Below, piece after piece: positions 12,179 to 20,721 of a stretch of 64,000 nt of DNA. The notes below the pieces were generated by a model. That model was given only the letters and a program-made list of their open reading frames with translations, was not told where the DNA came from and searched no databases. Location of the stretch: sequence record LR756511.1. One strand, 5' to 3'. The stretch's first letter is position 1; every line of letters begins with the position of its first letter. Made by a program: the position numbers and the translations under genes.

Positions 12179-12510
12179 TATTCAGTCCATTCAATAATCG
12201 GACAGACCTTATCCTTTTTAGCCTTCAACCACTTACCAATCAATGTATTTGGATTATCAGGGTCTGCTTTTTTAAGCTGTCTTGCCATCCTCCACTCATC
12301 GCGTTTGTCAGCGATCCAACAAAGCAGGAAGAATGGGGATACCAGAATGGTTAAAAATAGGACCATTGGCAATCCAATGATTATTAGCACAAGCAAGTGC
12401 CAGAAGTAACTACAAAAATCCTTGTATGGCAATTCCCCGTCTACAAGTTGTGCATTAGGCGTGCAATATTTAATCAGCCTATAATGCCAACTATTTCGAC
12501 TTAGTTTCAT
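12178..12510 (-). CDS. Membrane protein
   Basis: Long hydrophobic stretch FWHLLVLIIIGLPMVLFLTILVSPFFLLCWI. Confidence 0.7.
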   Translation of the reverse strand: MKLSRNSWHYRLIKYCTPNAQLVDGELPYKDFCSYFWHLLVLIIIGLPMVLFLTILVSPFFLLCWIADKRDEWRMARQLKKADPDNPNTLIGKWLKAKKDKVCPIIEWTE

Positions 12511-13258
12511 CTTTCACTTCCTCAATCGTGTCATATTTTACAGCTTCCGCCTCCAATGCAGCGTTCACCACTTCCATTGCTGGCGATACTGGACCTGCGG
12601 AACACAAGCGAGCTTTGTAATCGTCAAATCCCTTCGACCCACTAGAAGCAAATGCATACGAAGTAATTACCTGTGCCGCCTCGTTAAAGTCGTCCAACTT
12701 AACAAGTGGAGTATTCATTATTGTGCCAATCTCTTCCCAAAAAGCATTGGGACCAGAGCGATGCGGAGAGTAAAGGCATTGAAGCGCGTAAACGTTAATA
12801 CCCAACTCTTTAAGATCGGCAAGCTCCTTACGCCAATCAAGTCTGTCCTTGTTCTGTGGGTCCGATGGCGGATGTGGTTCATCATCGCCAATCATAACAA
12901 GAACCTTGCCGCCCTTAGCATCAGACCAGCCAAGCTTCTTGGCAAGGTTTAAAGCTAGTTCATAGCATTCAGGGGAGTCGCCACCACCAGTATTAGGAGC
13001 ATTACGAATGAACTTAAATACTGCGGCTTTATCTTGCGTAAGTTCTTGGAGCGTATAGCACTTATCTCCGTCGCAATAATCGCCGTGAGCAATAAATCCT
13101 ACTTGAAGATTAGGGATGTTCTTAAACATTTCCTCGCAAGTTTGCTCAATGTGTCTTCTCACATTGGCGATACAAGGGTTCATAGAGCCAGTTGTATCAA
13201 AGCAGAAAACAACTTCTGTAGCCTTCGGAAGATTCGTAGCAATGTCTTTCTTACTCAT
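12491..13258 (-). CDS. vWA domain protein
   Basis: MIDAS FDTTGSM, GGGDSPECY and VMIGDDEPH. AAGGAG RBS before ATG 13258. Confidence 0.9.
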   Translation of the reverse strand: MSKKDIATNLPKATEVVFCFDTTGSMNPCIANVRRHIEQTCEEMFKNIPNLQVGFIAHGDYCDGDKCYTLQELTQDKAAVFKFIRNAPNTGGGDSPECYELALNLAKKLGWSDAKGGKVLVMIGDDEPHPPSDPQNKDRLDWRKELADLKELGINVYALQCLYSPHRSGPNAFWEEIGTIMNTPLVKLDDFNEAAQVITSYAFASSGSKGFDDYKARLCSAGPVSPAMEVVNAALEAEAVKYDTIEEVKDETKSK

Positions 13259-13271
13259 GTCATTCTCCTTT

Positions 13272-13496
13272 TCAATCATGGTATCCGTTTGTTGTGTGAA
13301 AAGCAACACGATCTGCTGATCGCCGCACATAAGATAAATCGTAATATTGCGGCACATGGTTAACGAAAACCCAAGAATAATCTATTTTCTGGCAGTCGCA
13401 AACTGGCTCTGGATCGGATGTTACGAATGTGTGGTTACAGCGACAGCAGTACCAACACCACTCATCGCTTGTTTGCCAAAAAAGTATTTTTAACAT
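13272..13496 (-). CDS. Small Cys-rich (zinc-ribbon-like) protein
   Basis: WYCCRCNHTF...VCDCQ. Confidence 0.5.
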   Translation of the reverse strand: MLKILFWQTSDEWCWYCCRCNHTFVTSDPEPVCDCQKIDYSWVFVNHVPQYYDLSYVRRSADRVAFHTTNGYHD

Positions 13497-15867: not shown

Positions 15868-16251
15868 ATGGACAAAACAACCCGTTGCACCGATTGTTAT
15901 GCAGAGTTTACGGACGACGATTTAGTAGGCAAAATATCGTGCCCAAGTTGCGGCACATCATCCTTGCCATGCGACATCAAGGAAGACGTAACCATTAAAA
16001 TAAACTGGCACGAATTGCGAATCCTAACGATTTGGGCGTCTAATTGGGCGGGCCACGCTTGCAACATTGAATCCCGCAATACGCTTAACTCTATAATTAA
16101 ACGATTAGAGTCGCAACGACCCGAAGGGTTTGCGGCCTTAACACTTTTACAAGAGCTTAAAGAACTACCCGAAGCTCTTAAAAAAGAGGGAATTGAGATT
16201 GGGTCAGTTGAATGTTATAACGGGACTAAGAAGATATATCCAGAGGATTAA
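15868..16251 (+). CDS. Zinc-ribbon protein
   Basis: CTDC...CPSCG at the N-terminus. Confidence 0.65.
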   Translation: MDKTTRCTDCYAEFTDDDLVGKISCPSCGTSSLPCDIKEDVTIKINWHELRILTIWASNWAGHACNIESRNTLNSIIKRLESQRPEGFAALTLLQELKELPEALKKEGIEIGSVECYNGTKKIYPED

Positions 16252-16628
16252 GGTTTATTTCTGCACTCATCGCACAAAGTCTGAATCCAGCTTCCCTCTG
16301 TGGTTACATTTCCCTTCGTCCCACAATGCTCGCAAGTATGAAGCGACTCTTTTTCAGCTTCTCCCACAATTTTATTTGTCGCAGCATTACCGTATAAAGT
16401 ATACAACCTCAACTCGCCAAACTTCTCTTTAATCTGCGCAAATTTAAAGTTGTCAGGAGCGACTTTGGCTAATTCCTTACAAGCATTTTCTAATATGCTA
16501 TACCATCCGTCGCCGTGCGCACATCCCCACGCCATGCACGTACTCATGGGATCGCCATACATATCCTCAAAAAACTTAGGATATGCGTCCATCAACTTTT
16601 TTTCTAGTTCCTTGTTCATATAAATCAA
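16248..16628 (-). CDS. Hypothetical protein with C-terminal CxxC pairs
   Basis: GDGW..., QIKEKFGELRLY, CEHCG...LCDEC. Confidence 0.7.
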   Translation of the reverse strand: MIYMNKELEKKLMDAYPKFFEDMYGDPMSTCMAWGCAHGDGWYSILENACKELAKVAPDNFKFAQIKEKFGELRLYTLYGNAATNKIVGEAEKESLHTCEHCGTKGNVTTEGSWIQTLCDECRNKP

Positions 16629-17121
16629 ACCAATCCTTATCCTCGTTCACATTGGTATCATGCAGACATAATTCCATGATGAAACCATCTGGCGGTGTAA
16701 AGCCGAATATTCCACTGTGCCTCTGCCACAAAGAATCGTATTTAACTCTATCATACTCTCGATCTGTGCATAGATGATAGTCTTTTCCCTTATTTCGACT
16801 TAATGGGTAACGACTATCCCTAGCCTTGTAATGAACTTCAAAATAGATACTGCGATCTTTGTATTGTTGTAGATATGGACATTCAATTTTTACACGCTTG
16901 ATATCGACACCACTCTCTTTGAGTTTGTCAACGATGCCATCGACATACTTCTTACACTCTTCATAATTAGGGGCATGGTGGGCCTGACTAGTCATATACT
17001 CCGTGCGATAATACGACCAATCAGGCTTCACCAAATCAAGAGTTATGGTCCTTAAACCTAAATCTTGTGCCGCATCTAATATCTTTTCATCACCTGTTAT
17101 GTGAATCTCAAAGACTTCCAT
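16576..17121 (-). CDS. Hypothetical enzyme-like protein
   Basis: Enzyme-like motifs EIHIT, RVKIE, YFEVH, SRN and ELCLHDTN..D..W. Confidence 0.65.
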   Translation of the reverse strand: MEVFEIHITGDEKILDAAQDLGLRTITLDLVKPDWSYYRTEYMTSQAHHAPNYEECKKYVDGIVDKLKESGVDIKRVKIECPYLQQYKDRSIYFEVHYKARDSRYPLSRNKGKDYHLCTDREYDRVKYDSLWQRHSGIFGFTPPDGFIMELCLHDTNVNEDKDWFDLYEQGTRKKVDGRIS

Positions 17122-17402
17122 TATTTGCCCAACTCCAATCCTGTAGCCAACATAATGCCGCCGAACTTTTCCTTATAAGCATTAGCAAGATCATCGTCTA
17201 TTTCTGTCTCAAACACCACATTCACTTTTGTCACAGTGATTGTGTGACCCTTCATAAATGGACAGAAGGGAATCATCGCCAAACCTTCTTTTGCCAACGC
17301 TATCTTAATCGGATTCTTAACCGATAGGTCAACGCCAGTTTCAGTAATGTCACCAATAATCTCTTCACCAGTCACTAACTTCAATAACTTAACCATCATC
17401 AT
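17121..17402 (-). CDS. Sm-like fold protein of T4-like phages
   Basis: VKLLKLVTGEEIIG...KNP...PFCPF pattern. Confidence 0.65.
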   Translation of the reverse strand: MMMVKLLKLVTGEEIIGDITETGVDLSVKNPIKIALAKEGLAMIPFCPFMKGHTITVTKVNVVFETEIDDDLANAYKEKFGGIMLATGLELGK

Positions 17403-17406
17403 CTCC

Positions 17407-17604
17407 TTAAAAATAAAATAAAAACCATATTGCCGCAGATAAAAGCCATACTAATGCCGCATTCATTGCCATTCCAAGAAAAGAATAGAGAACAAATGGG
17501 ATCATTAGAAACGGGGCAAACATACCGCCTATTTCCCGTCGATGTAACAATCGTAACAGGATATAATTCCAAGGGAATCCTAGAATACCAATTAAATTAG
17601 CCAT
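17407..17604 (-). CDS. Small membrane protein
   Basis: Mostly hydrophobic 65 aa. Confidence 0.6.
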   Translation of the reverse strand: MANLIGILGFPWNYILLRLLHRREIGGMFAPFLMIPFVLYSFLGMAMNAALVWLLSAAIWFLFYF

Positions 17605-18166
17605 GTTTAATCGCCTGACTCAATCTAGGTTCTGCACAACCAGTGCCATACACCCACACAAAACTTTCAACCTGTCTCAACCCATAGGAGCCAACTTCTA
17701 TACCATTTATTTCTATGTCTAAATTCATAAAAGAATTTGGCATCGGATTATTAACCACTTTCATTTCGTTGGTACGATCCTCGTCATAACCGCTAAAGAA
17801 CCCTTTAGCTTCCTCTATCATTTTATAAACTAAAGAACTGTAAGGGACATCTTTGTAGTCGGGAAGCCAGATAAGCTCATTTTTCAAGAAATACTGTAAA
17901 TGCAAATCGTCCTGAACCTTCTCATCACGGAAGCATGGCGTTACACATTGATATTTCTTTCCCTTTTCCAACTTGTCTCTCATCTCAAGAAAAGATTGCT
18001 CGCCAGAAGCTACTAACTCTCCAGCGAACGTGCTGAAAAGTCTTGCCCCTGGAGGACGAGTAATTAACATCGTATCCAAGGAGATGATCCAAGGAACTTC
18101 GATATATTCATACCCGCAACGCTGATAATATTCAACCGCATCTGCAATCTTTCTGTAATCTATCAT
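17597..18166 (-). CDS. Class II aminoacyl-tRNA-synthetase-like catalytic core (no anticodon domain)
   Basis: Motif-1-like GYEYIEVPW, motif-2-like TPCFRDE...YFLKNEL, IEVGSYG and motif-3-like GTGCAEPRL in only 189 aa. Confidence 0.7.
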   Translation of the reverse strand: MIDYRKIADAVEYYQRCGYEYIEVPWIISLDTMLITRPPGARLFSTFAGELVASGEQSFLEMRDKLEKGKKYQCVTPCFRDEKVQDDLHLQYFLKNELIWLPDYKDVPYSSLVYKMIEEAKGFFSGYDEDRTNEMKVVNNPMPNSFMNLDIEINGIEVGSYGLRQVESFVWVYGTGCAEPRLSQAIKHG

Positions 18167-18507
18167 TTGTCACCAAACTTCGCTTTTAAACGCTCATACT
18201 CCGCACGCTCTTTTTCTTCTTCTCTAGTTTTAATATTATCATCAATTTTCTTGATTATTTCGCCAATTAATTCCTGTGGGTTTAATTCTTTTTCATTCGT
18301 AACCCTCAGAAGCTTTATTACCTTGTATTCTTTAGCCATTCTGATAAGACGGGATTTGGCACTTTCGAAATAGCCATAATCCTCCGCTTCCTTACCCCAT
18401 TTCTCACTTAATTCTTCAATGGCGCCTTCAATCGTGGCAGAAGCCATCCTGCCTAGATGAGCATAATTACCATCTTCCGTTTCCGCTTGGTAGAATAAAT
18501 AAATCAT
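18163..18507 (-). CDS. Hypothetical protein
   Basis: Coupled 114-aa ORF with a charged helical C-terminus. Confidence 0.65.
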   Translation of the reverse strand: MIYLFYQAETEDGNYAHLGRMASATIEGAIEELSEKWGKEAEDYGYFESAKSRLIRMAKEYKVIKLLRVTNEKELNPQELIGEIIKKIDDNIKTREEEKERAEYERLKAKFGDK

Positions 18508-18758
18508 TTCCTTGCTCCTGATTCAAACGCACGTTGGGTTATGTAAGACATATCCATTAAATCTTCCATTGTAATCTGACCAGCATAATGATTCTTCAAA
18601 TATCCTTCAATGGCACCAAGCATGTCTGACATCTCTATCAGACACATTAATCTTGCTCCCTGCTCCATTGCGTCCTTAAGCTCAGCCGCCTCTTCAAGAA
18701 TCTTTGAAATTTCGCCGTACTCACCGCGCGGAATTTCACTCAGATGGTAGCCAGCCAT
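18504..18758 (-). CDS. MazG-like all-alpha NTP pyrophosphohydrolase
   Basis: KILEEAAEL...LIEMSDMLGA gives the EExxE and ExxD metal-binding motifs. Confidence 0.65.
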   Translation of the reverse strand: MAGYHLSEIPRGEYGEISKILEEAAELKDAMEQGARLMCLIEMSDMLGAIEGYLKNHYAGQITMEDLMDMSYITQRAFESGARK

Positions 18759-18979
18759 TATTCATCCACCCGTGCTTTCACATCCGACAATTTATCGGGA
18801 AGAGTGCCATGCTCAGCCAGCCACTCATCGTCCGCGACGATTGTTTCGTATTCAACACCAATAGCGTCTAATATATCATCCCAATCAAGCCTGTGATTTT
18901 CCATCACTAACTTGCCGTTAATGTAAAGCCCTTCCCAATCATTGTCGTCACTAACAAAAGTTATCTTCTTCTTTTTCAT
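18758..18979 (-). CDS. Hypothetical acidic protein
   Basis: Coupled 73-aa ORF (DDWEGLYINGKLV). Confidence 0.6.
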   Translation of the reverse strand: MKKKKITFVSDDNDWEGLYINGKLVMENHRLDWDDILDAIGVEYETIVADDEWLAEHGTLPDKLSDVKARVDE

Positions 18980-19454
18980 AAGATTCTTCCATTTCTTCTA
19001 CAAAGTCTTCACATCCATCAACCAAAAACTGCATTACGTAGCCATCCTCATCCACGTCTTCGTAATGATTCCTAACAACTCTCACCGCTTTAAATCCTAA
19101 TGATTTAAAAAATAGTTGGGCAGGAAGATTCCCTTCTCTAACCATTCCTTCTATCTTTATTCGTCGGTCAGCTTTAAGACCTTGACACCTGAATACATAC
19201 TCAATTAACTTCCTGCCTATCCCAATTCGGTGATATTTCGTTGCAAGACTCAAAAGCTCGTACCACTTTGGATGGACGTTGTAGACCATATAGCCAACAA
19301 CTTCTTTTCCAGAAATGGCAACAATTCCACGTCCATGTTTAAGAGCAGTTTTAAAATCTCGTTCGGTCCATTCATTGCCTGGAAAATTAGCTTTTTCAAT
19401 CTCATAGACCTGTGGCAAATCCAGGTCTATCATCCAACGGGTACTTACTTCCAT
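18951..19454 (-). CDS. GNAT acetyltransferase (RimI-like)
   Basis: YHRIGIGRKL acetyl-CoA motif and VREGNLPAQLFFKSLGF. Start moved to 19454. Confidence 0.85.
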   Translation of the reverse strand: MEVSTRWMIDLDLPQVYEIEKANFPGNEWTERDFKTALKHGRGIVAISGKEVVGYMVYNVHPKWYELLSLATKYHRIGIGRKLIEYVFRCQGLKADRRIKIEGMVREGNLPAQLFFKSLGFKAVRVVRNHYEDVDEDGYVMQFLVDGCEDFVEEMEESYEKEEDNFC

Positions 19455-19461
19455 ATTACTC

Positions 19462-19671
19462 TCAGATGATTGTAGCAATTCCGTCTTCGACTGTAACATC
19501 ATGACAAAACCCTTGCATTACCAACATTGGCTGTTTGTCTCGCCACTTCGTTTCACATGGAACACGACATTTCACATTTTTGCAAGGTATACATTTGCCT
19601 CGAAAATGTACTGTCATCCCCTTAACAGAACGTCGAAAGTGATAAAAAAAGCGATAAATCTTCATGCCCAA
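19462..19671 (-). CDS. Hypothetical basic protein
   Basis: 69-aa ORF (MTVHFRGKC...QP.LVMQG). Confidence 0.6.
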   Translation of the reverse strand: MGMKIYRFFYHFRRSVKGMTVHFRGKCIPCKNVKCRVPCETKWRDKQPMLVMQGFCHDVTVEDGIATII

Positions 19672-19731: not shown

Positions 19732-20016
19732 ATGAAACGGTCGAAAAAGAAGACATATAAACTCCTAATGAAGAAGTGTTTTTTCTGTCCCGAAGACAAT
19801 GAAAACCTCTTAGATGCCCACAGGATTATTCCAGGTAAAGATGGCGGCACATACATACCGACCAATATTCTCTGTATTTGTTCCAATTGTCACCGTCGAG
19901 TACACGCGGGCGAAATCGTGGTAGACCGCAAGTATCCCTGCACTTCTGGAAAATTGGTTGTTCATTATTTCGATAAAGGTATTGAATACTGGAAAGAGGA
20001 ATCTAACTTTTCATAA
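19732..20016 (+). CDS. HNH endonuclease (zinc-finger type)
   Basis: CFFC...AHRIIPGKDGG...NILCICSNCHRRVH. Confidence 0.9.
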   Translation: MKRSKKKTYKLLMKKCFFCPEDNENLLDAHRIIPGKDGGTYIPTNILCICSNCHRRVHAGEIVVDRKYPCTSGKLVVHYFDKGIEYWKEESNFS

Positions 20017-20680
20017 ACAGCCGTTCAATTCGTTCGTATTTACCAGCCTTACCAGAAATATCAGTTTTTGTCTTCATTTCTTTGATACATTTGAAATCGT
20101 CAGGAGCTTCATACTCGGAAACAACCACTGTATTGTCAACAGACCATTGCCGCATTACTTCCCAAAACTCGTCGCTATCGAATTTTATGCCGTGAATCTT
20201 TGTGGTGCAACGGTAGGGCGGATCACAATAGATCAACCAATCTTTCGGAATCCACTCTCGATAATCTCTGTAATAAAATTCAATTCCACCCATGCTCTGA
20301 GCCTTCTTTTTAAGGCTATTTTCGGCATTAAGGTAGTATTTCCTATCGCCTGCGCGAGCGAAACCACCAAACCATTTGCCAGAATAGGAACAACCGAACC
20401 CTACGAAAGCGCGTAATGCGCTTGGTTCTTCGTTCCTCAAACGTTGATAATCTTCTTCAGTTACTTCTGATGGATAGGCAAAGGTGCCGTCCTTGACGGC
20501 ATTCAGAAGCATGATTAGATCGGGGTGAGCATCCGAACCAATACGGCGATTCTCCATGCCAATAATTACATTGGCACCACCGACAAATGGTTCGAAATAT
20601 ACCTGATCTGGTTTTCGCAGGTCTTTTAGTATCGGGAGAATGTATTTAACGATTCTTTGTTTTCCGCCGAAGTATTGCAT
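20003..20680 (-). CDS. DNA adenine methyltransferase (Dam/D12 class)
   Basis: YFGGK, EPFVGGANV (motif I) and DPPY (motif IV). Start moved to ATG 20680. Confidence 0.9.
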   Translation of the reverse strand: MQYFGGKQRIVKYILPILKDLRKPDQVYFEPFVGGANVIIGMENRRIGSDAHPDLIMLLNAVKDGTFAYPSEVTEEDYQRLRNEEPSALRAFVGFGCSYSGKWFGGFARAGDRKYYLNAENSLKKKAQSMGGIEFYYRDYREWIPKDWLIYCDPPYRCTTKIHGIKFDSDEFWEVMRQWSVDNTVVVSEYEAPDDFKCIKEMKTKTDISGKAGKYERIERLFMKS

Positions 20681-20721
20681 TCGGACGGTGTAACATTTCA
20701 CGAAAAATTACACAATGTTAT

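What the first reader, a model, noticed from the sequence alone, without database searches (positions are those of the whole stretch)
16576..18758. aaRS-like ligase core + MazG-like pyrophosphatase + unknown enzyme: candidate uncharacterised modification pathway
Seen: within one coupled minus-strand run are a MazG-like protein (18504-18758), a 189-aa class II aaRS catalytic core lacking any tRNA-recognition domain (17597-18166) and an orphan with enzyme-like motifs EIHIT/RVKIE/YFEVH/SRN/DTN (16576-17121). A GNAT lies just upstream. Established: truncated class II aaRS paralogs (EpmA, AsnA, carrier-protein ligases) adenylate amino acids for non-tRNA acceptors, and MazG folds hydrolyse non-canonical NTPs or alarmones. 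Inference: a module that makes or removes an amino-acylated nucleotide or protein adduct, possibly for nucleotide modification, tRNA repair or anti-stringent-response activity.
Basis: partly seen in the sequence, partly recalled or inferred. Interest (0 to 1): 0.65.

Follow-up and report, generated by a model that had tools for sequence, protein, structure and literature searches.

The report
Phage SerRS-core/MazG pair plus solo antitoxin
A huge phage carries a widespread but uncharacterised enzyme pair (a stripped-down seryl-tRNA synthetase core always coupled or fused to a small MazG/HisE-like pyrophosphatase) and, next to it but independent of it, a lone copy of a protein that in bacteria partners a tRNA-damaging abortive-infection toxin.

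Summary
The ORFs are real and lie in one unbroken minus-strand run of the 595-kb uncultured phage LR756511.1. The three-enzyme pathway is not supported; there are two separate modules.

Module A is the 84-aa MazG/HisE-like protein plus the 189-aa class II core.
- The core is SerRS-derived. Its best fold matches are SerRS (Z 18-21), and it keeps SerRS motifs 1-3 and the residues I recall as serine-binding.
- It lacks the tRNA-binding arm and has a shortened motif-2 loop.
- The two genes have almost the same distribution in cultured phages (276 and 278 records).
- They lie within about 2 kb on one strand, mostly abutting, in 65 of 65 IMG/VR loci, in both gene orders.
- They are repeatedly fused into one protein.
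- Their function is unknown and I found no paper on them.

Module B is the "orphan". It has about 390 relatives and matches a PADLOC AbiEi model (57 of 58 members).
- A bacterial homologue sits directly upstream of an AbiEii toxin.
- Phage copies have no toxin. Some lie next to CCA-adding-type nucleotidyltransferases, and some are fused to NUDIX or MazG.
- It is linked to Module A only in close relatives.
- I read it as a candidate counter-defence enzyme acting at tRNA 3' ends.

All mechanisms here are inferred.

The parts
18504..18758 (-). 84-aa MazG/HisE-like (all-alpha NTP pyrophosphohydrolase-like) protein; obligate partner of the SerRS-derived core (Module A)
   Evidence: phrog_6408, E 5e-35. 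PRA-PH matches 24/31 family members and MazG 6/31, all below cut-off. Invariant E22 E23 E26 ... E42 D45. hhalign against HisE gives E 1e-3 over the metal-binding motifs. Close to the aaRS-like gene, mostly abutting, in 65/65 IMG/VR loci.
18163..18507 (-). 114-aa ORF inserted between the two Module A genes; no family match
   Evidence: No Pfam, PHROG, NCBIfam or PADLOC hit. Close relatives carry an unrelated 70-74-aa ORF at the same place. Most other phages have the two genes abutting.
17597..18166 (-). 189-aa SerRS-derived minimal class II adenylating core, with no N-terminal tRNA-binding arm and a shortened motif-2 loop (Module A)
   Evidence: phrog_4806, E 4e-41. Profile against PDB finds SerRS 6blj, E 3e-4. 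Model pLDDT 95.5. VIA gives SerRS Z 18.3-21.1, above HisZ/HisRS-like (<=17.9), PylRS 17.0, aa:CP ligase 16.2, AsnA 14.9 and GenX 13.8. Conserved features: P25, S54-G-E56, TPCFRDE, F93-x-K95-x-E97, D150, E157, G174-T175-G-x-A-x-P-R181.
17407..17604 (-). 65-aa hydrophobic ORF filling the apparent intergenic gap; its start overlaps the stop of the aaRS-like gene
   Evidence: not studied further
17121..17402 (-). 93-aa protein of unknown function (phrog_527), directly upstream of the AbiEi-like gene in this phage clade
   Evidence: phrog_527, E 2e-15. The same cluster lies upstream of the homologue in L001, L008 and L010, and nearby in L019.
16576..17121 (-). 181-aa solo homologue of an AbiEii-partner ('AbiEi', PADLOC PDLC02279) family; alpha+beta fold with no clear solved relative (Module B)
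   Evidence: PADLOC AbiEi, E 4.7e-11, 57/58 members. The bacterial homologue L103:6160-6840 lies directly upstream of a PF08843 AbiEii gene and shares the signature motifs. No AbiEii in LR756511.1 or four other carrier contigs. Model pLDDT 93.4. No clear fold match. Fusions to NUDIX and MazG. CCA-adding-type NTase upstream in L016 and L108.
16248..16628 (-). 126-aa ORF overlapping the 3' end of the AbiEi-like gene by 53 nt; unknown function, syntenic only in close relatives
   Evidence: No family match. Cluster c17 occurs in 9 related loci.
18951..19502 (-). RimI-like GNAT acetyltransferase upstream of the run; not a conserved neighbour of the pair
   Evidence: Acetyltransf_1, E 1e-8. TIGR01575 rimI, E 7e-20, below cut-off. 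The cluster is seen in only 3 loci, in two of them directly upstream of the AbiEi-like gene.

Best explanation
The region holds two independent accessory modules, not one three-enzyme pathway.

Module A is a two-component enzyme, fused into one chain in many lineages.
- It combines a SerRS-derived minimal class II core with a HisE/MazG-type nucleotide pyrophosphohydrolase.
- The core keeps every residue class needed to bind ATP and a small hydroxy amino acid, so it most likely forms seryl-adenylate (inferred).
- It has lost the coiled-coil arm and most of the motif-2 loop, which SerRS uses to hold tRNA-Ser. The acceptor is therefore probably not recognised as in canonical tRNA charging (inferred).
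- I think it most likely passes the seryl or adenylyl group to a nucleotide-type acceptor or a free RNA 3' end.
- The MazG-like partner would then hydrolyse a nucleoside-triphosphate substrate or by-product of the same reaction (inferred).

Module B is a solo copy of the protein that, in bacteria, sits in the antitoxin position upstream of AbiEii/MenT nucleotidyltransferase toxins. Those toxins block tRNA 3'-CCA ends. I read the phage copy as an orphan antitoxin-like counter-defence enzyme that either neutralises such toxins or undoes their damage at tRNA 3' ends (inferred).

Shown here: the folds, the motifs, the gene linkage, the fusions and the homologies. Every catalytic step is inference.
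For: Module A as one unit:
- The two genes have almost the same distribution in cultured phages: 276 and 278 records, with near-identical genus counts.
- They lie on the same strand within about 2 kb, mostly abutting, in 65/65 IMG/VR loci, in both gene orders.
- They are fused into one ORF in L063, in 8 of 15 genome-collection loci, and in Microcystis phage MaMV-DC gp129.
- No third conserved neighbour exists.

SerRS origin and intact active site:
- VIA Z 21.1 (rmsd 2.3 A, 185 of 189 residues) for SerRS, and Z 18-19 for six further SerRS entries, above all other class II enzymes.
- TPCFR is shared with E. coli SerRS, as are the TAE-like loop, F-x-K-x-E and the G-[ST]-G-x-A-x-x-R motif 3.
- 35 columns are invariant among 54 sequences, which shows strong purifying selection.

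Loss of tRNA-binding elements: the protein starts at motif 1, and the motif-2 loop is about 8 residues shorter than in E. coli SerRS.

Module B:
- The PADLOC AbiEi model PDLC02279 matches 57/58 family members, best E 2.6e-13.
- In genome G242 the homologue lies immediately upstream of a PF08843 AbiEii gene, inserted between aroA and cmk. It shares the signature motifs (E-x-H-x-T, M-x-S, R-x-K-x-E, Y-x-E-x-H, S-R-N, T-x-R, E...D...W), but not R39/E41.
- None of five phage records with the gene has an AbiEii.
- A CCA-adding-type NTase lies directly upstream in two diverged lineages.
- Natural fusions to NUDIX and MazG exist.
- The homologue in Acinetobacter phage ME3 sits among DHH, His-phosphatase and metallophosphoesterase genes.

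Literature:
- AbiEii/MenT toxins extend tRNA 3'-CCA ends, and their antitoxins come from different families (PMC10435456).
- MenT3 attacks uncharged tRNA-Ser, and the CCA-adding enzyme counteracts it (PMC11541572).

Independence of the modules.
Against: - No activity was measured for any of the proteins.
- The MazG/HisE assignment rests on sub-threshold profile matches and a motif.
- The serine assignment relies on my memory of which SerRS residues bind serine (Belrhali et al. 1994; Cusack et al. 1996). I could not confirm it from a paper held here.
- An intact SerRS active site is equally compatible with real tRNA-Ser charging.
- Only one bacterial AbiEii-adjacent homologue of Module B was inspected, and the family is rare in the genomes sampled (about 1 in 400).
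- PADLOC's label shows a position in AbiE loci, not tested antitoxin activity.
- hhalign probability between the phage family and the single bacterial protein is low (8%, E 0.004). The HMMER matches are what carry significance.
- In close relatives of this phage the two modules stay within 2-4 kb of each other, so a loose functional tie cannot be excluded.
Confidence: 0.55

Rival explanations
1. One conflict, three tools. All three genes serve a single purpose: protecting the tRNA-Ser acceptor end from AbiEii/MenT-type or similar toxins. The SerRS-like core keeps tRNA-Ser charged, because charged ends cannot be extended. The MazG-like enzyme destroys the toxin's NTP donor and yields pyrophosphate, which supports pyrophosphorolytic trimming. 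The AbiEi-like protein neutralises the toxin or trims the added nucleotides.
For: - MenT3 attacks uncharged tRNA-Ser using CTP. tRNA-Ser is poorly charged. The CCA-adding enzyme trims the modified ends in the presence of PPi (PMC11541572).
- The AbiEi-like family is fused to MazG and to NUDIX in other phages.
- CCA-adding-type NTase genes lie beside the AbiEi-like gene and within 1.5-7.5 kb of the pair in L066, L068 and L072.
- The three genes stay within 2-4 kb of each other in this phage clade.
Against: - The pair occurs without the AbiEi-like gene in all 275 other cultured phage records. The AbiEi-like gene occurs without the pair nearby in 8/12 loci.
- The core lacks the arm and motif-2 loop that SerRS needs for tRNA-Ser.
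- The MazG fused to the AbiEi-like domain is a canonical MazG, not the 84-aa family.
- Three of 65 loci with a nearby NTase is within what chance could give.
Confidence: 0.15
2. Module A is simply a compact, genuine seryl-tRNA synthetase that supplements host SerRS during infection. The MazG-like protein is an unrelated nucleotide house-cleaning enzyme that happens to be linked.
For: - The SerRS catalytic motifs are complete, and SerRS is the best structural match.
- Huge phages often carry translation genes.
- Many carriers are tRNA-rich large phages (tRNA richness is from my own knowledge).
Against: - Strict adjacency in both orders and recurrent fusion are hard to explain for unrelated functions.
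- The N-terminal arm that binds the tRNA-Ser variable arm is missing (its role is stated in PMC8821087).
- No tRNA gene lies in the 64-kb window.
- All known truncated class II paralogues use non-tRNA acceptors (my own knowledge of AsnA, EpmA, aa:CP ligases and HisZ).
Confidence: 0.12
3. Module A makes or reshapes dinucleoside polyphosphates or alarmones. A tRNA-less SerRS core would turn seryl-adenylate plus ATP (or ppGpp) into Ap4A-type compounds. The MazG-like partner would hydrolyse alarmones or set the nucleotide pool, giving an anti-stringent or RNA-capping effect.
For: - The adenylation site is intact and no tRNA domain is present.
- SerRS is a known Ap4A synthase, and E. coli MazG has been linked to ppGpp (my own knowledge: Belrhali et al. 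1995; Gross et al. 2006).
- Phages are reported to destroy alarmones (abstract of PMC13728456).
Against: There is no direct evidence. Synthesising and hydrolysing the same class of compound in one fused protein would be futile unless the specificities differ. The MazG-like family is closer to HisE than to MazG in profile matches.
Confidence: 0.1
4. Module B is not a counter-defence factor. It is the regulator or partner of a phage nucleotidyltransferase or a general nucleotide-metabolism enzyme, and its likeness to an AbiE-locus protein reflects shared biochemistry only.
For: - It lies directly downstream of PolyA_pol-type NTases in L016 and L108.
- It is fused to NUDIX and MazG.
- Neighbours include a nucleoside 2-deoxyribosyltransferase-like gene, a P-loop kinase and phosphoesterases.
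- Structural relatives occur in giant eukaryotic viruses, which do not meet AbiE.
Against: - Most phage copies, including this one, have no NTase beside them.
- The bacterial homologue occupies the classic antitoxin position of a two-gene AbiE cassette.
Confidence: 0.2

Closest known systems
Bacterial-type seryl-tRNA synthetase (SerRS), catalytic domain
   Same: - Same fold: Z 18-21, rmsd 2.2-2.4 A over 182-185 of 189 residues.
- Motif 1 proline, TPCFR-x-E motif 2, F-x-K-x-E, acidic metal ligands and G-[ST]-G-x-A-x-x-R motif 3.
   Different: - It has 189 residues, against about 280 for the SerRS core and 430 for the whole enzyme.
- There is no N-terminal coiled-coil arm, and the motif-2 loop is about 8 residues shorter.
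- It is always coupled or fused to a MazG/HisE-like protein.
- tRNA charging is untested.
Amino acid:[carrier protein] ligases (e.g. Bll0957, PDB 3mey), which are truncated SerRS homologues
   Same: A SerRS-like core without a tRNA-binding domain, encoded next to a small helical protein of about 80-90 residues. Structural match Z 16.2.
   Different: - The neighbour shows no phosphopantetheine-binding signature and instead resembles HisE/MazG.
- The phage core is closer to bacterial-type SerRS than to 3mey or methanogen-type SerRS (Z 21 against 16.2 and 14.8).
HisZ/HisE of histidine biosynthesis
   Same: An aaRS-like protein (HisZ, Z 14.6-17.2) and a PRA-PH-type pyrophosphohydrolase both act around one ATP-derived intermediate. 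PHROG and GenBank annotators call the phage core 'histidyl tRNA synthetase'.
   Different: The sequence motifs are SerRS-specific, not those of HisRS or HisZ. No HisG partner was seen beside the pair. HisZ is regulatory, whereas the phage core keeps catalytic residues.
AbiEi/MenA antitoxins of AbiE/MenAT (DUF1814 nucleotidyltransferase) toxin-antitoxin systems
   Same: It matches a PADLOC AbiEi model. Its bacterial homologue sits upstream of AbiEii. Antitoxins of this toxin family are known to come from several unrelated families, and some are enzymes (PMC10435456).
   Different: - No winged-helix domain and no Pfam AbiEi match.
- No structural match to solved AbiEi/MenA4-type proteins among the top rows.
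- The phage copy has no toxin gene.
Phage orphan antitoxin-like enzymes against DarTG
   Same: A phage gene homologous to a bacterial antitoxin, carried without the toxin. Conserved polar residues suggest an enzyme rather than a plug (precedent cited in PMC13728456).
   Different: The toxin family and fold are different, and there is no experimental evidence here.

Membership tests
Class II aminoacyl-tRNA synthetase catalytic core, SerRS lineage | Antiparallel beta-sheet class II fold | tested here: met
   Model pLDDT 95.5. Foldseek E 4e-10 to PylRS/SerRS. VIA Z 21.1 to SerRS.
Class II aminoacyl-tRNA synthetase catalytic core, SerRS lineage | Motifs 1, 2 (fRxE) and 3 (GxGxGxxR) | tested here: met
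   P25; F79-R80-D81-E82; G174-T175-G176...R181. All are invariant or nearly so in 54 sequences.
Class II aminoacyl-tRNA synthetase catalytic core, SerRS lineage | SerRS-specific residues (TxE loop, F-x-K-x-E, Ser/Thr in motif 3) | tested here: met
   Alignments to Naegleria and E. coli SerRS. The roles of these residues in serine binding are from my memory of the T. thermophilus structures, not from a paper read here.
Seryl-tRNA synthetase (functional enzyme) | N-terminal coiled-coil arm that binds the tRNA-Ser variable arm | tested here: not met
   The protein begins at motif 1. Family lengths are 173-230 aa, and the longer members have only short, unconserved N-terminal extensions. The role of the arm is stated in PMC8821087.
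Seryl-tRNA synthetase (functional enzyme) | Full-length motif-2 loop contacting the acceptor stem | tested here: not met
   About 8 residues shorter than in E. coli SerRS.
Seryl-tRNA synthetase (functional enzyme) | Charges tRNA-Ser | not testable with these tools
   Needs an aminoacylation assay.
MazG/HisE all-alpha NTP pyrophosphohydrolase superfamily | Match to Pfam PRA-PH or MazG above the gathering score | tested here: not met
   The window protein scores 13 bits against a cut-off of 21.3. 24/31 relatives match PRA-PH at E <= 0.1, best 5e-4. TIGR03188 gives E 0.03.
MazG/HisE all-alpha NTP pyrophosphohydrolase superfamily | EExxE ... ExxD metal-binding motif | tested here: met
   E22 E23 E26, E42 and D45 are invariant. 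They align to the same columns of 30 bacterial HisE sequences.
MazG/HisE all-alpha NTP pyrophosphohydrolase superfamily | Four-helix-bundle fold | not tested
Amino acid:[carrier protein] ligase system | Adjacent carrier protein with a phosphopantetheine attachment site | tested here: not met
   None of the 31 partner sequences hit PP-binding at E <= 0.1.
AbiEi (PADLOC PDLC02279 type) antitoxin-position protein | Significant match to the family model | tested here: met
   E 4.7e-11 for the window protein. 57/58 relatives match, best E 2.6e-13.
AbiEi (PADLOC PDLC02279 type) antitoxin-position protein | Encoded directly upstream of an AbiEii (PF08843) toxin | tested here: not met
   No AbiEii anywhere in LR756511.1 or four other carrier contigs. 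The feature is met for the bacterial homologue in G242.
Canonical AbiEi/MenA3-4 (COG5340) | [quoted passage not shown] | tested here: not met
   No Pfam AbiEi family hit at E <= 1. Fold searches list no such protein in the top rows.
2H phosphoesterase or CYTH triphosphate tunnel (considered for the 181-aa protein) | Two H-x-T/S motifs on a two-lobed fold, or an eight-stranded tunnel with ExExK | tested here: not met
   Only the first H-x-T is present. No 2H enzyme appears in the top 50 of the wide structural search, and CYTH entries score TM about 0.19.

The most novel reading that the evidence does not exclude
The SerRS-derived core, its MazG/HisE-like partner and the solo AbiEi-like protein all act in one arms race over the tRNA acceptor end. 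Phages would counter AbiEii/MenT-type (and perhaps pyrophosphorylating) toxins in three ways: by blocking or re-acylating the 3' end of tRNA-Ser, by destroying the toxin's NTP donor while supplying pyrophosphate, and by enzymatically reversing or preventing the 3' extension. That would make the pair, present in nearly 280 cultured phage records, the first phage-encoded aminoacylation-based counter-defence.
Probability: 0.12. Interest if true: 0.85.

Novelty: new variant of a known kind. Interest (0 to 1): 0.62.

Why it matters
The SerRS-core/MazG-like pair is carried by nearly 280 cultured phage records. These include E. coli phages of the phi92/phAPEC8 group, therapeutic Acinetobacter baumannii myoviruses, Caulobacter phiCbK-like phages and Microcystis cyanophages, and the pair also occurs in many uncultured huge phages. 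It is annotated inconsistently as seryl- or histidyl-tRNA synthetase, and I found no study of it.

Truncated class II synthetase paralogues have repeatedly turned out to perform unexpected chemistry, as with AsnA, EpmA and the carrier-protein ligases. An obligate, often fused partnership with a nucleotide pyrophosphohydrolase has not been described among the known paralogues compared here. It can be tested directly in laboratory coliphages.

The neighbouring gene would be a new candidate for a phage answer to AbiE/MenT abortive infection. The 2026 review of phage countermeasures that I searched lists no countermeasure against that system. It also points to an unrecognised family of AbiEii partners with an enzyme-like conserved site and no clear solved structural relative.

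Tried and rejected
- **PDB sequence searches.** Single-sequence searches of all three proteins gave only chance hits. Profile searches gave SerRS for the core and nothing for the 181-aa or 84-aa families.
- **2H or CYTH idea for the 181-aa protein.** I suspected this from the alternating charged strands, but the fold searches did not support it.
- **Carrier-protein idea for the 84-aa protein.** I considered an aa:CP-ligase-like system and rejected it, because no PP-binding match was found.
- **hhalign of the 84-aa family against E. coli MazG alone.** It showed nothing useful. The comparison with a HisE alignment was weak but hit the right motif.
- **ESM Atlas look-ups.** They failed three times because the machine was busy.
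- **tblastn of distant members of the 181-aa family against cultured phages.** It found nothing new. Only the profile search of one record (ME3) and the structural search in BFVD reached cultured phages.
- **Wider search for bacterial homologues of the AbiEi-like family.** It gave one full-length case in about 1,100 genomes. A second hit was a fragment with uninformative neighbours.
- **The Mesorhizobium chromosomal copy of the pair.** It lies near an AAA ATPase and a metallophosphoesterase, which gave no clear lead.
- **Literature searches for the pair.** They returned only genome-announcement papers.
- **Promoter and terminator scans.** They were at chance level.
- **Other.** No whole genome is held for the window. 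The reads tools were not used.

Full report
**What is there**

The window is identical to part of LR756511.1, an unannotated 595,163-bp uncultured phage genome. They sit in an unbroken run of overlapping or abutting genes, in this order:
- a 73-aa ORF;
- the 84-aa MazG-like ORF (18504-18758);
- a 114-aa ORF (18163-18507);
- the 189-aa aaRS-like ORF (17597-18166);
- a 65-aa hydrophobic ORF that fills what looked like a 194-nt gap (17407-17604);
- a 93-aa ORF (17121-17402);
- the 181-aa 'orphan' (16576-17121);
- a 126-aa ORF.

Promoter-like and terminator-like sites are at chance level. A RimI-like GNAT lies upstream. No tRNA gene lies in the window.

**The aaRS-like protein**

It belongs to phrog_4806 (E 4e-41) and to a family of more than 2,000 proteins of 173-230 residues. 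In 54 diverse members, 35 columns are invariant.

An AlphaFold model has pLDDT 95.5. Foldseek places it with the PylRS and SerRS catalytic domains (E about 4e-10). A search of 48,161 chains that does not rely on Foldseek ranks SerRS first, with everything else lower:
- human mitochondrial SerRS: Z 21.1, rmsd 2.3 A over 185 of 189 residues;
- six other SerRS entries: Z 18.3-19.3;
- HisRS-like/HisZ: Z up to 17.9;
- PylRS: Z 17.0;
- the carrier-protein ligase Bll0957: Z 16.2;
- AsnA: Z 14.9;
- GenX: Z 13.8.

The sequence agrees. A family profile finds SerRS in the PDB (E 3e-4). Alignments to E. coli SerRS show these shared features:
- the pentapeptide TPCFR;
- the loop S54-G-E56, opposite T-A-E;
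- F93-x-K95-x-E97, opposite F-x-K-x-E;
- acidic residues D150 and E157;
- motif 3, G174-T175-G-x-A-x-P-R181.

From memory of the T. thermophilus SerRS complexes, these are the residues that hold ATP, magnesium, and the amino and hydroxyl groups of serine. I could not confirm the residue roles in a paper available here.

Two things are missing. One is the N-terminal coiled-coil arm that binds the tRNA-Ser variable arm (its role is stated in PMC8821087). The other is about eight residues of the motif-2 loop. So the protein is a SerRS-derived minimal adenylating core. It very probably activates serine or a similarly small amino acid, and it is unlikely to recognise tRNA-Ser in the canonical way.

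**The MazG-like protein**

The window protein alone gives only sub-threshold matches: PRA-PH E 0.14 and TIGR03188 E 0.03. Of 31 relatives, 24 match PRA-PH and 6 match MazG at E <= 0.1.

The invariant residues E22, E23, E26, E42 and D45 form the EExxE...ExxD pattern of this superfamily. A profile comparison with 30 bacterial HisE sequences aligns exactly those columns (E 1e-3, probability 21%). I could not fold this protein. The assignment is likely but not proven.

**The pair is one unit**

- tblastn finds the core in 276 cultured phage records and the 84-aa protein in 278, with nearly identical genus counts. In every record where both positions were listed, the genes lie within about 400 bp of each other, and most abut.
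- In 65 of 65 IMG/VR loci fetched with the core, the partner lies on the same strand within about 2 kb, usually overlapping or abutting, and in both gene orders.
- The two are fused into one ORF in L063, in 8 of 15 loci from the genome collection, and in Microcystis phage MaMV-DC gp129.
- Clustering all neighbouring ORFs shows no third conserved family.
- The 114-aa ORF between the two genes here is a clade-specific insertion. Close relatives have an unrelated 70-74-aa ORF there.

I found no paper on this pair. GenBank and PHROG call the core seryl- or histidyl-tRNA synthetase.

**The 'orphan'**

It has 145 word-search relatives and 389 representatives at E <= 1e-3. It has none in cultured phages by tblastn.

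Its invariant residues lie on alternate positions of beta strands:
- E5-x-H7-x-T9;
- R39 (and nearly invariant E41), M43-x-S45;
- R76-x-K78-x-E80;
- Y93-x-E95-x-H97;
- S108/N110, T119-x-R121, E150, D155, D161, D163, W164.

The model is confident (pLDDT 93.4). It has no clear solved relative: Foldseek finds nothing below 1e-3, and the best VIA score is Z 6.3, with generic ferredoxin-like and double alpha+beta-barrel matches. Predicted viral structures do contain relatives. They include Aeromonas, Acinetobacter ME3, Rheinheimera and Sinorhizobium phages and several Klosneuvirus-group giant viruses, all uncharacterised.

The informative result came from PADLOC.
- The protein matches AbiEi model PDLC02279 (E 4.7e-11), as do 57 of its 58 relatives.
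- In bacterial genome G242, the one full-length homologue found (226 aa) lies immediately upstream of a PF08843 AbiEii gene. The two form a two-gene cassette inserted between aroA and cmk.
- That homologue shares the signature motifs, though not R39/E41.
- None of five phage records carrying the gene, including LR756511.1, has an AbiEii.

Other contexts point to nucleotide or RNA-end chemistry.
- There are natural fusions to a canonical NUDIX domain and to a canonical MazG domain.
- A 244-245-aa PolyA_pol/CCA-adding-type nucleotidyltransferase lies directly upstream in two diverged lineages.
- A PNK-like P-loop kinase lies upstream in another.
- In phage ME3 the homologue sits between a DHH phosphohydrolase and a histidine phosphatase, near a metallophosphoesterase.

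The literature fits this picture.
- AbiEii/MenT toxins add nucleotides to tRNA 3'-CCA ends, and their antitoxins come from different families, some of them enzymatic (PMC10435456).
- MenT3 attacks uncharged tRNA-Ser, and the CCA-adding enzyme counteracts it (PMC11541572).
- Phages are known to carry orphan antitoxin-like enzymes against another toxin-antitoxin defence (cited in PMC13728456).

**Are the modules linked?**

Only through shared ancestry of this phage clade.
- In close relatives the order is kept, sometimes with extra genes inserted. In relatives at 43-53% identity, the 181-aa gene lies 3-4 kb from the pair in a different order.
- Of 12 IMG/VR loci with the 181-aa gene, 8 have no pair within 10 kb. 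In two of those contigs the pair lies 72 kb and about 200 kb away.
- Five further contigs show no pair at all, although they are incomplete.
- The cultured phages with the pair lack the 181-aa gene.

**Interpretation**

The three-gene pathway is not supported. I read the locus as two modules.

Module A is a bifunctional unit. The SerRS-derived core most likely forms seryl-adenylate. The MazG/HisE-like partner would hydrolyse a triphosphate substrate or by-product of the same process. The acceptor is unknown. Given the lost tRNA-binding elements and the precedent of other truncated class II paralogues, I favour a non-canonical acceptor such as a nucleotide or a free RNA 3' end.

Module B is a solo antitoxin-position homologue and a candidate counter-defence enzyme against AbiEii/MenT-type tRNA nucleotidyltransferases. 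The main rival is a role as partner of phage nucleotidyltransferases, or in nucleotide metabolism generally.

An attractive unifying idea is that all three act on the tRNA-Ser acceptor-end conflict. It fits the MenT3 literature and the MazG/NUDIX fusions, but it is contradicted by the independent distribution of the two modules. I give it about 0.12-0.15.

**Limits**

- No enzymatic step was tested.
- Only one bacterial AbiEii-linked homologue was inspected.

Noticed in passing
window 17407-17604 (-): A 65-aa strongly hydrophobic ORF fills the apparent gap after the aaRS-like gene. Its ATG overlaps the aaRS-like stop codon, and its own stop is followed by GGAG and the start of the 93-aa gene. 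It is possibly a small membrane protein.
   Followed up: no
window 18951-19502 (-); L012:506-955, L019:9565-10011: The upstream GNAT is RimI-like (TIGR01575 E 7e-20, below cut-off). A GNAT of the same cluster lies directly upstream of the AbiEi-like gene in two related contigs. GNAT toxins that acetylate charged tRNA are known, so this may not be chance.
   Followed up: partly
L016:9263-9997, L108:3214-3951; also L066, L068, L072, L112: Phages encode a family of minimal (244-245 aa) PolyA_pol/CCA-adding-type nucleotidyltransferases. It lies directly upstream of the AbiEi-like gene in two lineages and within 1.5-7.5 kb of the SerRS-core/MazG pair in three loci.
   Followed up: partly
LR756511.1 580947-581423 (outside the window; L110/L111): The same phage encodes a PolyA_pol-type nucleotidyltransferase in a 516-aa open frame, about 68 kb from the finding.
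   Followed up: no
KU935715.1 (Acinetobacter phage ME3) 130983-134090; L119: The distant homologue ME3_124 of the 181-aa protein sits in a run of phosphoesterase genes: a DHH-type phosphohydrolase, a histidine phosphatase annotated as 'phosphoglycerate mutase', and a metallophosphoesterase. This looks like an RNA- or nucleotide-end-processing cluster.
   Followed up: partly
BFVD hits A0A1V0SJD9, A0A2H4UU17, A0A5K0U8W2, A0A7D3QXP7: Predicted structures similar to the 181-aa protein occur in Klosneuvirus, Bodo saltans virus, Yasminevirus and Fadolivirus. These giant eukaryotic viruses are known for large sets of translation genes.
   Followed up: no
L098 (Mesorhizobium sp. SP-1A contig2, 678329-694850): This is the only copy of the pair found in an isolate chromosome. 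There the MazG-like gene may have a long N-terminal extension (272-aa ORF). The pair lies near an AAA ATPase and a calcineurin-like phosphoesterase, so it may be a prophage remnant or an island.
   Followed up: partly
L007 (Caulobacter phage CcrPW gp446); P0243, P0246, P0258 and others: Some lineages add extensions. The CcrPW core is annotated as 284 aa, with about 95 extra N-terminal residues. Many MazG-like relatives are about 140 aa, with a conserved N-terminal extension of about 55 residues of unknown function.
   Followed up: no
window 17121-17402 (-): The 93-aa protein belongs to phrog_527 (E 2e-15), a phage family of unknown function, and accompanies the AbiEi-like gene in this clade.
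   Followed up: no
window 19732-20701 and 12491-13357: A D12-class Dam-type adenine methyltransferase (20003-20701, -) overlaps the end of an HNH endonuclease ORF on the other strand (19732-20016, +). A 288-aa ORF at 12491-13357 (-) clusters with 252-364-aa ORFs in related loci; one gene of that size class in L001 carries weak VWA Pfam hits.
   Followed up: no
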